NCBI GenBank assembly: GCA_002104945.1
Contig: MCFH01000009.1
Span: forward strand, 868,001-932,000
Length of the DNA: 64,000 nt
Reading direction: 5' to 3'
Source of the DNA: Piromyces finnis finn
Taxonomy: Eukaryota; Fungi; Neocallimastigomycota
Below, in pieces: positions 50,399 through 64,000 of this stretch. The translations under genes and the position numbers were made by a program. The number at the start of each line of letters is the position of its first letter. Within the stretch, counting starts at the first letter, position 1. Below the pieces are notes generated by a model that worked only from the letters and a program-made list of their open reading frames with translations, did not search any database and was not told where the DNA came from.

Positions 50399-59154
<8,756 letters not shown>

Positions 59155-59611
59155 TAATGCATTGTTTAAATATAATATCTTAATTAAAAAAAACCAATAT
59201 CATTTTATATATTAAATATATAATATCAATATATCATTATTTTTAATTTCAATTAAAATAATTTAAATAATTGAATTATCTTTTTTAAAATAACCAATTT
59301 TACTATCATTTAATAAAAAAAAAATAAAAATCATAATAAATAATTCATTAACATTATATATATATAATAATTATTTTCTTATATATAGTAATACTTTTTA
59401 ACAACAATGTAAAAATATTTTATTTATTTTTTTATAATAAAAACTATTAAATATATATCTATATAATTAACTGAAAATATTATTAATCAAATATTGACTG
59501 GAAACTTTAATGTTCAAATATTTTTAACCTATATAAATAATTTAAAAAAGGTACTTAAATTAATAAATTACTTTAATTTAAAAAAAAAACTTTATTTAAC
59601 TAACCTTTGAA

Positions 59612-62600
59612 TTAATTCTTTATTTGGTAAATCATCTATATTAGTATTTGAATATGTGCTAATGAAAAGGAAAATATTTAAATTAATTTATTTTATTAAT
59701 ATATAGTGTGTTATATTTAAAAGAATATATGTTATTTGCTATTCTTACAAATTTTCTAGTCTTTTCAAATTATTAATACTCTCTGGAATAGGTCCGTTCA
59801 ATAATTTATTATTTTGAAGTTGTCTTTACATTATATGATTATATATTTTTATTTATTATAATAATAGAAATAATAATATATAAATTTAATAGGATGTAAT
59901 ATTTCAATTGTTTTTTCTATTATTATTACTATAAAAAACATTTTACAATATTTTTAATCGGGTTAGTTTTCCTATATCATTAGGAATACTTCCTGAAAAA
60001 TTATTATAACTTAACCATAATTGGTTTAAACGAGAAAGGTTACATAAAAATTCAGGAATTTCACCTGAAAGTTTGTTTTCATTTAATATTCTAAATTTTC
60101 ATTTTGAATTTTGTTAAATATTAATTAATTATAATTATGAATAAATTATATGACAATTCAAGTATATATAAATATATGTTTCATACAAAACTGATAGTTG
60201 TTGTAAATTTTGAAATGATTTAGGTATTTCTCCTTTTAAAGAATTCTGTGCTAAGTATCTATTATTATTATTATTATTATTATATAAAAAAAGTAATTCC
60301 CAATATACAATAAAGCAAAGATATTAATTTACATTATTTTTACAATAAAAATAAAATACTTCATAATAAGCATACAAATGAGTTAAATTTGTTAAATTTC
60401 CCAAAGAATCTGGTATGCATCCTGTAAATTGATTATCTTGCATAATTCTATTTTATAATAAATACATAACACGGTTTTTTTTCCCGTTATTTATAGTTAT
60501 TCCCAGTTTTACTTTTTATATATATCATATAGTATACAATTTACGTACAAATGAACTAAATTTTTAAGATTTCCTATTTTATCAGGTATTTTCCCAACAA
60601 ATTTATTATGAGATAAATAACTAATAAAGTAAATTAATAATTTTTTATAAAATTATGAAAAATTGTATAATGTACTTACAGATGTGTTAACTTTTTTAAG
60701 TCACCTATGGAAGAAGGAAGTTCATCAGTGAAATTATTATGATCCAGACGTCTTATCATTTTAATAATTATAAAAATAATCTTAATGACAAAATTAATGC
60801 GTATATTACATAAATTAAAAAATTAATAAACTCACAATTCTACTAAATTCTGTAATTGACAAATTGTCTCAGGTATTTTTCCACTTAATGAATTTCCATG
60901 TAAACGTCTTTGATGATTAATAATGATATTTAATTAATATAAATAAATTTATATTTAAATTATTATAATTATATAGTAGATAGTATTATCAATATCTTCA
61001 TACAATGTAGTTAAATTATATAACAATCCAATAGAGTCTGGAATAGATCCTTTAATTTTATTATATGCTAGGCATCTTTTTTTTAAAAAAAAAATTCAAT
61101 TATTAAATTTATAATTAGTTTTTATTATTATAAAAAAAACAATAATAATTAAAATAAATACAATTCAGTAATAGTCTTATAATTTCCTATTTCTTCAGGT
61201 ATTTTTCCAGATATATTTTCTTTATCTAAAGTTCTATATATAAAAATAATTATTAATTATATGATTTAGTTTAAATTATATATAATTTTTTTTTTTTTTT
61301 TTTTTTTACATTTTTGTAACTTCATTTTGTAAAAATCTTTCAATTCTAATTTTACAGGATATATTTATATATAAAAAAATTTATTATAAAATTAATATCA
61401 TTTATTATTATAAAATATGAATTTAAATTAATATTTTAGTATGAAATACTTTTTTTTCCTTACTTTACACATAATCTTGGTTTTTCTAATTTATTACTAC
61501 TATGATGACTTCTTTCTTCATTCCTCATTGAAATATCATTTGTAGACTTTGCTAATCTAATACTTTCTTTATTGATTTCTATACTAGCAATTTTACTATT
61601 TATGATTTGGAAAGAATTAGAATTAATATCGCCAATATTGTTCATAGTCATGCTTTTTGGAATTTTTCCATTTTTTTTATTGTAAGATTTTATTTTATCA
61701 AAGCTATGAACTGAATTATTATATATTAAATTGGAACTTCTTATTGAATTTTGAGTAGAATTATTTTCAATGTTACTAATGCTTCTACGATGATGGCGAA
61801 TAGGATCATCATTACTATCATTAGTATCAATACAATTAACAGAAACAGAATGTTTCATTCGATTGCATTGCTTTGATTCTCTTTTTAAAGATAAATTATA
61901 AACGGAATGGTCATTAGAAGGTACAGCAATATCATAATTAGAATTAAACATAAATTCTAGGCTATTATTATTTATATTTTCCATTTCTTCATCATTCTGT
62001 TTATTAGATTCTTTTAAGTTATTATTTATTTGAAGTTGTTGATTTCTTAATTGAATAAGTAAAGAGGCAACTGTCATTAATGATATACGTTCAAAAGGAT
62101 CGTAATTCCATGTTTTCTCTAAAATGTCCCACATTTTATTTGAATATAAAATATTATTTTCTAGTGAAAAGTTGTTAACTTTAAGTTTTGAAGGATATTT
62201 ATCATGGATAATCATATATTCCACTTGAACTTCATTTATAATATCATAAAAAGGAATCTTTTGAAATATAATTTCATAGAAAAGACGACCAACTGAAAAG
62301 ATGTCAGAGAAAATACTAATTTTTCCAATAACATTACTATAATCATTATTTTGATCAAAACTTTTAAAATCATCTAGATCTTCATTATTACTGAAATGAT
62401 TTTTAATATTTTGTAGCTTATACTCTGAAAAAAGCTCTGGTGCCTTCCAACGAATTGCATCTGTAACTTTACATGGTATTGTCAACGTACTATTACTATT
62501 TTAAATATATAATTATCATATATTTATTAATCAAAGTATTTTTTTTTTTCTTTTTACAATTCTTTTTTGTCATATACAATTTAAATTTATTATCATTCTT

Positions 62601-63872
62601 CCCATAATTATACCTGTTAATTTGATTGGTTTGAAAAACACTTAATCCAAAATCACATATTTTAGGTTTTCCATTTTCTGTGATTAAAATATTATCACTT
62701 TTAATATCACCATGAATAATATTATTTTGATGAAGATGATATAACCCAGTAATTATTCCATGCATAATTTGTAATTTTTGTTCTGGAGAAATATTTTTCT
62801 GACTAGTATATGTTTTTACTGTACCTCGACTACAATATTCCGATATAATAGATGGGTATTGACTAATATGGCATGCACCATAGAATTGTAAAATATTTGG
62901 ATGGCTTTTAATCCTACTCCATATCTCTATTTCTCTTAAAAATAATTCTTTTTCATTAATATGTAAATTATTATTAATTCCATTGCTATCAATTATTGTT
63001 TCTTTATAACATTCATTTGTTTCGAGATTTAGCGTTTTCTTTGCAACTAATGCCCCATTATATATACACTTTTGTACATAGCAATAACTTCCAGATCTAA
63101 AGATTTATTTATCAAATATTTTATGATATTATTATAATTTTATTATATATATATATATATATTTATACACATTGCTATATAGTAATTTTTTAATCCATAT
63201 TATTTATTAATATTTTAATGTGTACCCAATGAAAGCATCTTTACTTTCTAATACATCAATATTAGTTTCATCAATAAACCATGAAGGAAGAGTTTTAGTT
63301 TCATTTGCTACTTTTGATTTTCTTTTCATATAACCCAATAGCTTTATGGCTAGATCATAAAGTTTAGGATTAGCTTGTGAATGATTTACCATATTCATAG
63401 TTTTTACAATATATTCATATTCATTTTTTTTAAATATATCTATGATAGCTGAATTTGATTGACCTACTTACAAAAAAAAAAATTTCAATTTAAAAAAATA
63501 TCATCAATAATTAAACTATATATATGATACAAAAATTAGTTTAAATTAAATACTATTTGAACTATTAATCTTGGATTTTTCTTCATCATTATCTGTCATA
63601 TAAGGAATATTCTTCTCCTTATTATTATTATTATTTTCAACTGTATATATTGCATATTTTTTTTTTAAAAAAATTATAATAAAGAAAATAAAAAATACAA
63701 CTTTCTGATTATTTATTAATGTATAACTATAGTAATAATTATAATAAGTTATATATATAAAATATATAAATAAAATATAATACTGACCTTGAATATTATT
63801 GCCTTCTACTAAATTAATTTTGCTTAATGATCGACTACTATTTTCCATTATAATTTTCTTTTTATTTTTCAT
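59612..63872 (-). CDS. TKL-group protein kinase fused to 10 C-terminal plant-specific-type (24-aa) leucine-rich repeats; no TM segment seen; about 16 exons
   Basis: Kinase motifs: LPSWFI, FIGSGSYCYV, VAKK, FLREIEIW, HPNILQFYG, HGDIKSDNIL, DFG, IRWKAPE, SDIFSVG. After a low-complexity linker the donor GTAAA|gtaagg (61464) splices in phase 2 to a 36-nt exon (61345-61310). LRR exons follow, e.g. 'LDKENISGKIPEEIGNY', 'LAYNKIKGSIPDSIGLL' and 'LHGNSLSGKIPETICQL'. The stop codon is at 59612-59614. Confidence 0.85.
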
Positions 63873-64000
63873 AATAATTGGACTATCTAATAACGATTAA
63901 TTATATATATATAACATGAAAAGTATTTTTTTTATAAAAGTATAAAAAAATCATTAAAGATTTACTGAATTCATTTTTATTATTTATTTATATTTCATAT

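What the first reader, a model, noticed from the sequence alone, without database searches (positions are those of the whole stretch)
59612..63872. Cytosolic kinase-first, LRR-last protein: an inverted, membrane-free counterpart of plant LRR receptor kinases
Seen in sequence: an apparently catalytically complete TKL kinase (G-loop, VAKK Lys, alphaC Glu, HGD, DFG, APE). It splices in frame, through a roughly 200-aa Asn/Ser-rich linker, to 10 LRRs of the plant-specific consensus LxLxxNxLxGxIPxxLGxLxxL. No signal peptide or TM helix is visible. The ORF track shows only the kinase and misses all the LRRs. Established: this LRR class is typical of plant receptor kinases, where it is extracellular and N-terminal. 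Inference: here it forms a soluble sensor-kinase, possibly a non-self or danger receptor in a fungus living in a dense microbial community. The substrate-region motif 'IRWKAPE' resembles the tyrosine-kinase 'IRWMAPE', so specificity is worth testing.
Basis: partly seen in the sequence, partly recalled or inferred. Interest (0 to 1): 0.8.

Follow-up and report, generated by a model that had tools for sequence, protein, structure and literature searches.

The report
Gut-fungus helical-bundle, kinase, LRR protein
The anaerobic gut fungus Piromyces finnis makes one soluble protein that joins an active-looking kinase to a plant-type leucine-rich-repeat domain, and it also carries an overlooked N-terminal helical (possibly MLKL-like) domain; this layout is not described for fungi and its function is untested.

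Summary
On the minus strand, 17 in-frame exons (63886-59507) encode a kinase, a 197-aa Asn/Ser-rich linker and 10 plant-type LRRs.

- **Identity:** every exon is 100% identical to the public P. finnis protein 'L domain-like protein' (955 aa).
- **Junction:** A 36-nt exon follows, and the TAA lies inside the GTAAGG donor.
- **Transcript evidence:** intron-free metatranscriptome contigs from relatives carry kinase and LRR in one ORF. No P. finnis reads could be laid.
- **Topology:** no signal peptide or TM segment was found.
- **Correction:** 'kinase-first' is wrong. The gene continues about 1.2 kb beyond the window. There, three unannotated exons encode a roughly 135-aa helical domain and a coiled coil. 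The domain looks MLKL_N-like by language-model features only; Pfam and fold searches do not confirm it.
- **Full length:** about 1209 aa in 20 exons. The public models are truncated (P. finnis) or split (Anaeromyces).
- **Kinase:** non-RD (HGD), with a Ser/Thr-type catalytic loop.
- **LRR:** the concave face is 87% conserved across genera, which points to an invariant partner.

Function is untested. The scan has flagged similar bundle-kinase-LRR genes elsewhere in this genome (s1-078639, s1-176773, s1-176947).

The parts
63887..64000 (-). 3' part of the intron that joins the upstream exon X3 (outside the window, equivalent to 64455-64005) to exon E1
   Evidence: Donor A|GTAAAT lies at L005:3091/3092 and the acceptor TTAG|AT at 63887/63886. 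The phase-1 join gives Asn, matching P0068 'IETIEN|SPII'.
63788..63886 (-).
   Evidence: 100% identical to P0068 residues 36-63. The frame is open upstream to the acceptor.
63554..63640 (-).
   Evidence: 100% identical to P0068 65-92 and 75% to the cDNA protein P0067.
63226..63463 (-). Exon E2: conserved helical pre-kinase region, ending in the start of the G-loop
   Evidence: 100% identical to P0068 95-172 and 85-87% to the orthologues.
62614..63096 (-). Exon E3: kinase N-lobe through DFG (G-loop, VAKK, alphaC Glu, HGDIKSDN, DFG)
   Evidence: Pfam Pkinase 1.4e-30. 100% identical to P0068 174-333. Motifs conserved.
61464..62495 (-). Exon E4: activation segment (IRWKAPE), kinase C-lobe, and a 197-aa Asn/Ser-rich linker with conserved Ser-rich islands (RHHRRSIS, PKSMxMNN)
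   Evidence: Pfam Pkinase 6.9e-7. 100% identical to P0068 335-677. Linker composition, conserved islands. Donor AAA|GTAAGG; the TAA at 61462-61460 lies inside the donor.
61310..61345 (-). 36-nt exon M: N-terminal half-repeat or cap of the LRR domain
   Evidence: In frame (phase 2 in and out). 100% identical to P0068 679-689. The homologous stretch is continuous in the intron-free contig L002.
59749..61233 (-). Nine LRR exons carrying ten 24-residue repeats: 61233-61162, 61075-61004, 60907-60836, 60751-60680, 60620-60549, 60447-60376, 60258-60187, 60090-59947 (two repeats), 59823-59749. All have phase-2 introns of 59-123 nt.
   Evidence: each exon 100% identical to P0068. Pfam LRR_1. Repeat register and conservation.
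59605..59658 (-). Exon L10: C-terminal cap region after the repeats
   Evidence: 100% identical to P0068 932-950. Donor AG|GTTAGT.
59507..59528 (-). Last exon (..LKIFEH, stop TAA at 59509-59507)
   Evidence: Matches the C-termini of P0068, P0002 and the cDNA protein P0067.

Best explanation
This is one 20-exon gene of Piromyces finnis, of which 17 exons lie in the window. It encodes a soluble protein of about 1209 aa. From the N-terminus the parts are:
- a roughly 135-aa helical domain, possibly of the MLKL_N/HeLo/RPW8 kind;
- a K/E-rich coiled coil and a Ser/Asn-rich spacer;
- a conserved pre-kinase helical region;
- a catalytically complete, non-RD (HGD) kinase of the TKL group with a Ser/Thr-type catalytic loop;
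- a 197-aa disordered linker with conserved basic Ser-rich motifs;
- a 10-repeat LRR solenoid without Cys caps.

Shown here: the architecture, its transcription as one mRNA in relatives, its conservation and synteny, and the lack of TM segments or a signal peptide.

Inferred: the LRR concave face binds one conserved partner in the cytosol. That binding, together with phosphorylation of the linker motifs, controls the kinase. The N-terminal bundle and coiled coil then mediate oligomerisation or membrane engagement as the output. The LRR is one of several C-terminal modules that this gut-fungal kinase family swaps; the others seen are SH3, ubiquitin repeats, or none.
For: - **Gene model.** Every exon is 100% identical to consecutive stretches of P0068. 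Introns have GC 0.06-0.22 against 0.19-0.33 for exons, and all are GT..AG.
- **One transcript.** P0001/L002 is an uninterrupted ORF across the C-lobe, linker, exon M and six LRRs. P0067 is a 1267-aa ORF on three contigs from three JGI datasets. It has stops before its ATG and spans the N-terminal domain, kinase and LRR.
- **Upstream exons.** They are collinear and phase-compatible in P. finnis, and 80% identical to P0067. They are also present in A. robustus.
- **Domains.** Pfam. The kinase is nearest to RIPK2, CTR1, LIMK1 and DLK. The LRR is nearest to plant LRR-RK ectodomains and to SHOC2.
- **No TM or signal peptide**.
- **Conservation between genera.** Kinase 84-85%, LRR 81%, linker 50%. 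LRR concave positions 87% against 73% for convex positions. Linker motif islands are conserved.
- **Synteny.** A cyclin gene lies upstream and a large gene converges downstream in both genomes.
- **Paralogues.** The same N-terminal domain and kinase occur with SH3, ubiquitin or no C-terminal module.
- **N-terminal domain.** MLKL_N clusters top the protein-language-model search for two paralogues that are 31% identical (0.94 with 186 shared features; 0.95 with 195).
Against: - No RNA reads of P. finnis itself were laid. Transcript evidence therefore comes from relatives and from the public annotation.
- The N-terminal fold is unresolved. There is no Pfam or PDB sequence hit. The good AF2 model, of a paralogue's domain, gives only generic helical-bundle matches (Foldseek E > 1; VIA Z <= 8.8, below the tool's noise level for helical bundles). 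It also shows one long first helix rather than a clear four-helix bundle.
- The regulatory mechanism is inference. No ligand, substrate or phenotype is known.
- The linker could simply be a flexible tether.
Confidence: 0.6

Rival explanations
1. Single-chain sensor, kinase and executioner for regulated cell death or immunity. The cytosolic LRR detects an invariant microbial or danger molecule. The non-RD kinase switches on. An MLKL_N-like bundle then oligomerises and permeabilises membranes. This would be an NLR-like logic with a kinase in place of the NTPase.
For: - MLKL_N clusters top the language-model feature search for two paralogues.
- The best shape match in the Atlas is a PF17111 cluster, TM 0.60. 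From memory, PF17111 was formerly named HeLo-like N.
- The order bundle, helical region, kinase parallels MLKL.
- The kinase is non-RD with Gly, a class tied to receptors for conserved microbial signatures in plants (PMC3411088).
- Kinase-NB-LRR receptors such as Tsn1 exist in plants (PMC10952240).
- Scan notes report sister architectures in this genome; I did not check them.
Against: - No Pfam MLKL_N hit at E <= 10 in five family members.
- Fold searches are non-discriminating, and MLKL is absent from the top rows.
- The gene has a syntenic orthologue in each of the two annotated genomes, and a highly conserved LRR face. That is unlike diversifying immune receptors.
- No death or immune phenotype is known.
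Confidence: 0.2
2. Housekeeping signalling scaffold-kinase. The LRR binds an endogenous conserved partner, for example a small GTPase or phosphatase as in SHOC2 or fungal adenylate cyclase. The kinase acts in growth or morphogenesis. The N-terminal helices are only a dimerisation device.
For: - A syntenic orthologue in each of the two annotated genomes.
- LRR as conserved as the kinase, with the concave face at 87%.
- The cytosolic scaffold SHOC2 is among the LRR matches, at E 1e-43.
- Sister paralogues carry ordinary signalling modules, SH3 and ubiquitin.
Against: - The family appears limited to anaerobic gut fungi in the searches run.
- The non-RD catalytic loop and the MLKL_N-like features point elsewhere.
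- No partner is known.
Confidence: 0.3
3. Two separate genes: a kinase ending at the TAA at 61462-61460, and an LRR-only gene starting at the ATG near 61325.
For: An ORF list shows only the kinase. The ATG at about 61325 followed by GT could in principle start a phase-2 exon.
Against: - The TAA sits inside a consensus donor, GTAAGG.
- Relatives' intron-free contigs read through the homologous junction.
- The public models of two species join the two parts.
- Exon M is conserved as coding sequence.
Confidence: 0.02
4. A membrane receptor kinase whose TM segment or signal peptide was missed, leaving the LRR outside the cell.
For: The LRR type is the one used in plant ectodomains. P. finnis is said to have many LRR-TM surface proteins built from similar one-repeat exons (scan notes; I did not check them).
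Against: - No hydrophobic 19-mer scores above 1.37 in three orthologues, including the complete cDNA protein.
- The N-termini are polar.
- There is no LRRNT_2 cap or Cys pairs.
- The LRR is C-terminal to a kinase with no TM segment between them.
Confidence: 0.03

Closest known systems
Plant LRR receptor kinases (RLK/Pelle; e.g. FLS2, MIK2, Xa21)
   Same: Same 24-residue plant-specific LRR type; the best PDB sequence matches are FLS2, MIK2 and GSO1. LRR and kinase sit in one chain. The non-RD catalytic loop is as in FLS2, EFR and XA21.
   Different: No signal peptide, LRRNT cap or TM segment. The domain order is reversed and the whole protein is cytosolic. The kinase is not closest to IRAK/Pelle structures. 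There is an extra N-terminal helical domain and coiled coil.
MLKL and plant MLKL-like proteins (four-helix bundle, brace, pseudokinase)
   Same: An N-terminal helical domain, then a helical connector, then a kinase fold. Language-model features of the N-terminal domain point to MLKL_N clusters.
   Different: The kinase here keeps every catalytic motif, so it is not a pseudokinase. A C-terminal LRR is added. The MLKL_N fold is not confirmed by Pfam or fold search.
Kinase-NLRs (Pk-NB-ARC-LRR; wheat Tsn1, moss expansions)
   Same: Cytosolic, with the kinase before the LRR and the LRR as the C-terminal sensor (PMC10952240).
   Different: No NB-ARC or NACHT lies between kinase and LRR here, only a 197-aa disordered linker.
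ROCO / LRRK kinases
   Same: Cytosolic TKL-group kinases that carry LRRs (PMC1420674).
   Different: In ROCO proteins the LRR is N-terminal, and a Roc GTPase plus COR domain are defining. Pfam detects neither here.
SHOC2 and fungal adenylate-cyclase LRRs (cytosolic LRR scaffolds)
   Same: A cytosolic LRR solenoid used for protein or ligand binding. SHOC2 is a strong sequence match, E 1e-43. The adenylate-cyclase comparison is from my own knowledge.
   Different: Those proteins are not fused to a protein kinase or to an N-terminal helical bundle.

Membership tests
Plant-type LRR receptor kinase (RLK/Pelle) | N-terminal signal peptide and extracellular LRR with an LRRNT cap | tested here: not met
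   Polar N-termini. No LRRNT_2 in Pfam. The LRR is C-terminal.
Plant-type LRR receptor kinase (RLK/Pelle) | Single TM helix between LRR and kinase | tested here: not met
   The highest KD19 window is 1.37, inside kinase helix F, in three orthologues.
Plant-type LRR receptor kinase (RLK/Pelle) | 24-residue plant-specific LRR consensus | tested here: met
   Repeat register; PDB matches.
TKL group of protein kinases | Kinase domain closest to TKL members; catalytic motifs present | tested here: met
   PK_Tyr_Ser-Thr and Pkinase hits. The top PDB hits are RIPK2, CTR1, LIMK1, DLK, ZAK and KSR, though only at E around 1e-16. No kinase tree was built.
MLKL / MLKL-like | N-terminal MLKL_N four-helix bundle | tested here: inconclusive
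   No Pfam hit at E <= 10. Foldseek and VIA give generic bundles only. Language-model features rank MLKL_N clusters first for two paralogues.
MLKL / MLKL-like | C-terminal pseudokinase (lost catalytic residues) | tested here: not met
   VAKK, HGD, DFG and APE are all conserved.
ROCO / LRRK | Roc GTPase and COR domains between LRR and kinase | tested here: not met
   Pfam finds only Pkinase and LRR families on the full-length orthologue P0002 and on the fragment P0001.
NLR / STAND, including kinase-NLR | Central NB-ARC or NACHT NTPase | tested here: not met
   No NTPase family appears in Pfam scans of the exons or orthologues. The linker is low-complexity.

The most novel reading that the evidence does not exclude
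Anaerobic gut fungi collapse a necroptosis-like pathway into one polypeptide. A cytosolic plant-type LRR senses an invariant microbial or danger ligand, an active non-RD kinase acts as the switch, and an MLKL_N-like bundle executes at the membrane. This would be a fungal LRR-based intracellular receptor, an NLR analogue with a kinase instead of an NTPase, in a kingdom where reviews state that LRR receptors of this kind are absent.
Probability: 0.15. Interest if true: 0.85.

Novelty: new variant of a known kind. Interest (0 to 1): 0.55.

Why it matters
Reviews of fungal immunity state that fungal NLR-like receptors use WD40, ANK or TPR repeats, and that no LRR versions were found (PMC12881547; PMC10197012). 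Here a conserved cytosolic protein of gut fungi couples a plant-type LRR to an active kinase and a possibly MLKL-like N-terminal domain. No paper I searched describes this combination.

It offers a simple system to ask how an LRR controls a kinase without an NTPase or a membrane. It also allows a test of whether early-diverging fungi have LRR-based intracellular sensing.

There is a practical point too. The public gene models are wrong at the 5' end: truncated in P. finnis and split into two genes in A. robustus. Domain censuses based on them miss the architecture.

Tried and rejected
- **Promoter and terminator scan.** This is a bacterial consensus scan and is irrelevant for a eukaryotic gene. 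It gave no signal above shuffles.
- **RNA evidence.** No reads were laid.
- **Exon M.** I first mis-framed it and considered skipping it or using other donors. The relative's cDNA corrected this.
- **Word search with the P0010 N-terminal region** found only P0010 itself.
- **Metagenome scan with the N-terminal alignment** gave only two loci.
- **AF2 of P0067:1-175** gave pLDDT 49 and was unusable.
- **N-terminal domain searches.** Profile against PDB sequences, Pfam, Foldseek and VIA-align gave no specific match.
- **Donor of the LRR (possible horizontal transfer).** Bacterial and plant proteins tie at 35-47% identity, so no donor can be named.
- **Joined models.** I sent no joined spliced model to any search or fold. 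I used exon references and the stored public proteins P0068, P0002 and P0067 instead. The 1209-aa P. finnis model has no reference and was neither searched nor folded.
- A local tblastn in the sandbox had them in its subject. No database, pattern, paper or findings search was given those letters.
Full report
**Where and what.** The region is very AT-rich, with GC about 0.10-0.25. An ORF list shows only kinase fragments on the minus strand. Reading the minus strand and translating it in three frames showed a kinase split by introns. It is followed by a series of 24-residue LRR units, each on its own 72-nt exon. All introns begin with GT and end with AG. They are 59-324 nt long and have GC 0.06-0.22, against 0.19-0.33 for exons. 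Pfam confirms Pkinase on exon 63096-62614 (1.4e-30) and on exon 62495-61464 (6.9e-7). It also confirms LRR_1 and LRR_4 on the double-repeat exon.

**The disputed junction.** Exon E4 ends at 61464. Its donor is AAA|GTAAGG, so the 'in-frame TAA' at 61462-61460 is part of the donor. I first mis-framed the small exon at 61345 and considered other joins. An HMMER search of 1.84 billion representatives with the E4 translation settled it. It returned two informative hits:
- P0001, 510 aa and 71% identical;
- P0002, 924 aa and 61% identical.

Both carry the kinase C-lobe, the linker and LRRs in one protein. P0001 is the whole of a 1533-nt JGI contig (L002) with no intron. Its DNA reads straight through the homologous junction. 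That fixes the window's small exon as 61345-61310 (36 nt, phase 2 in and out), which then splices to 61233.

**Identity of the window.** Each of my exon translations is 100% identical to consecutive stretches of P0068, separated by one residue at each split codon. P0068 is 'L domain-like protein [Piromyces finnis]', 955 aa, on GCA_002104945.1 contig MCFH01000009.1. So the kinase-plus-LRR product is already in public databases, unnamed as to function. The comparison added two exons: one at 63640-63554, and a last 22-nt exon at 59528-59507 reached from donor AG|GTTAGT at 59605/59604. It also showed that the ATG at 63872 is internal, because the exon starts at the acceptor at 63886.

**Transcript evidence.** No P. 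finnis reads were examined. I sent none of those places to any database, pattern, paper or findings search afterwards. The one caveat, about locus L005, is disclosed under 'tried and rejected'. Indirect evidence is strong, however. P0067 is a 1267-aa orthologue, 81% identical to P0068 in the LRR and 85% in the kinase N-lobe. It is an uninterrupted ORF on contigs of about 4.1 kb from three different JGI datasets (L003, L004, L006). It has in-frame stops before its ATG and a short 3' UTR. In a lineage whose genomic copies carry about 19 introns, these are spliced mRNAs. They carry the kinase and the LRR on one molecule.

**The gene does not start in the window.** P0067 has 340 residues before the part that matches the window's first exons. 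A local tblastn found these residues encoded just upstream of the annotated start in P. finnis, on the same strand. The locus is L005, and a window coordinate equals 67096 minus the L005 coordinate. The pieces are L005:2070-2453 (80% identical) and L005:2641-3090 (64% identical). The splice sites and phases fit:
- X1, ATGGGAG|GT, at L005:1886-1892;
- X2 at L005:2053-2450;
- X3 at L005:2641-3091, leaving phase 1, which is exactly what the exon at 63886 needs.

The annotated start Met of P0068 lies inside X3, in an ORF that is open upstream of it. The same exons lie upstream in A. robustus. There they overlap a gene called separately as a 319-aa product. The full P. finnis CDS is 3630 nt, that is 1209 aa in 20 exons. 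It runs from window-equivalent 65210 to 59507. 'Kinase-first' is thus an artefact of the window edge and of truncated public models. This lead came from scan note s1-185679, whose stretch starts at this ATG.

**The N-terminal domain.** It has no Pfam or PDB sequence match, either singly or as a five-sequence profile. AF2 on the P0067 version, which has a long loop, failed with pLDDT 49. AF2 on the compact paralogue from L007 gave pLDDT 81.5 and pTM 0.69, an all-helical model. The fold searches were not informative:
- Foldseek against PDB found nothing with E below 1.
- VIA-align against 48,161 chains gave only generic helical bundles, with Z at most 8.8. That is under the tool's stated noise level for helical bundles. 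The ZAR1 coiled-coil domain is at rank 16 with Z 7.2, and MLKL is not listed.
- The Atlas shape search ranks a PF17111 cluster first, at TM 0.60.

By contrast, the protein-language-model feature search puts MLKL_N (PF22215) clusters first for P0067 residues 1-170 (0.94, 186 shared features). It does the same for the 31%-identical paralogue P0010 residues 1-128 (0.95, 195 shared features), with RPW8 and MCAfunc clusters lower in the list. I treat MLKL_N-like as a supported lead, not a result.

**Family context.** The closest relatives all come from anaerobic gut fungi or from gut metatranscriptomes. They share the N-terminal domain, coiled coil, pre-kinase helices and kinase, but they differ at the C-terminus:
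- LRR in this gene and in P0002, P0067 and P0001;
- SH3 in P0007/L007;
- four ubiquitin repeats in P0070, an Orpinomyces model;
- nothing in P0010.

The LRR is therefore one swappable output or input module. The best PDB matches of the kinase are TKL members (RIPK2, CTR1, LIMK1, DLK, ZAK, KSR), at only about 1e-16.

**The LRR.** The best PDB matches are plant receptor ectodomains: FLS2 1.6e-175 (summed over repeats), then MIK2, GSO1 and PEPR1. The cytosolic scaffold SHOC2 also matches, at 1e-43. In the large protein collection, bacterial multidomain proteins tie with plant LRR-RKs at 35-47% identity. These include Bacteroidota T9SS-tailed proteins. So the repeat class is not plant-exclusive, and no donor can be named. 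There is no LRRNT_2 cap and there are no paired Cys. No segment is hydrophobic enough for a TM helix: the highest KD19 window is 1.37, in kinase helix F. The N-termini are polar, including that of the complete cDNA protein.

**Selection pattern.** I compared P. finnis with A. robustus and with the P0067 species.

| Region | Identity |
|---|---|
| Kinase N-lobe through DFG | 84-85% |
| LRR | 81% |
| Linker | 50% |

Within the ten repeats, the solvent-exposed concave positions are 87% identical and scaffold positions 90%. Convex and other variable positions are 73%. The concave residues differ from repeat to repeat. This is what a specific, invariant binding partner would produce, and it is the opposite of a diversifying receptor. 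The gene also sits in conserved synteny in both genomes, with a cyclin gene upstream and a large convergent gene downstream. The linker contains conserved Ser-rich basic islands (RHHRRSIS, MKHSxS, PKSMxMNN), which are plausible phospho-regulatory sites.

**Kinase chemistry.** All catalytic motifs are kept in every orthologue. The catalytic loop HGDIKSDN has Lys two residues after the Asp. By the Hanks-Hunter rule, which is established knowledge and was not tested here, that marks Ser/Thr or dual-specificity kinases rather than tyrosine kinases. The IRWKAPE resemblance to tyrosine kinases is therefore weak evidence. HGD makes this a non-RD kinase. In plants, non-RD receptor kinases with Cys or Gly at this position are those that recognise conserved microbial signatures (PMC3411088). 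This is a correlation only.

**Comparison with the known.**
- It is not a plant LRR-RK: there is no signal peptide or TM segment, and the order is reversed.
- It is not ROCO/LRRK: there is no Roc-COR.
- It is not an NLR or a kinase-NLR such as Tsn1: there is no NB-ARC (PMC10952240).
- It is not MLKL proper: the kinase is intact, and the N-terminal fold is unconfirmed.

Fungal-immunity reviews state that LRRs were not found in fungal NLR-type receptors (PMC12881547; PMC10197012). None of my paper searches found this architecture described. An older kinome paper even says that TKLs are absent from fungi (PMC3019232).

The scan's own notes list sister genes elsewhere in this genome. These are a bundle-pseudokinase-LRR gene, a bundle-active-kinase-RNI-LRR gene, and many LRR-TM genes built from the same phase-2 one-repeat exons. 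I did not check them. They suggest that the LRR array arrived by exon shuffling within the genome.

**Verdict.** Three corrections apply. It is not kinase-first. The LRR face is conserved rather than variable. Tyr specificity is unlikely. The most likely working is a cytosolic, LRR-regulated non-RD Ser/Thr kinase whose output runs through an N-terminal helical and coiled-coil module. Whether that output is MLKL-like membrane attack remains open. I rate it a new variant of a known kind, with interest 0.55.

Noticed in passing
L005:1886-3091 (window-equivalent 65210-64005) and L001:1408-2874: The public annotations mis-model the 5' end. The P. finnis model starts at an internal Met inside exon X3. 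The A. robustus annotation calls the N-terminal domain and coiled coil as a separate 319-aa gene directly upstream of the kinase-LRR gene.
   Followed up: yes
window 61464-62050 (linker part of exon E4): The otherwise poorly conserved Asn/Ser-rich linker holds short islands that are invariant or nearly so across genera (MKHSxS, RHHRRSIS, PKSMxMNN, EKxxLC). They are candidate phosphorylation or docking motifs.
   Followed up: partly
L007:384-1517; P0007; P0070; P0010: Paralogous gut-fungal kinases share the same N-terminal helical domain, coiled coil and kinase, but they end in SH3, four ubiquitin repeats, or nothing. This is a modular family with swapped C-terminal modules.
   Followed up: partly
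window 61286-61308 (minus strand, intron after exon M): A run of about 23 A directly follows the GTAAAA donor of the 36-nt exon. Such a homopolymer could confuse read mapping or oligo-dT priming at this junction.
   Followed up: no
window 55596-59154 (+ strand): Long Asn-rich ORFs on the opposite strand converge on the 3' end of this gene. In L005 the convergent neighbour is annotated as a 1903-aa WD40-repeat protein, and a large convergent gene also follows the orthologue in A. robustus.
   Followed up: partly
They are AT-rich, low-complexity intron sequence. I worked beside them.
   Followed up: no
window 52389-52652: A long simple-sequence tract; it reads as a poly-Thr/poly-Ile ORF on the minus strand.
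   Followed up: no
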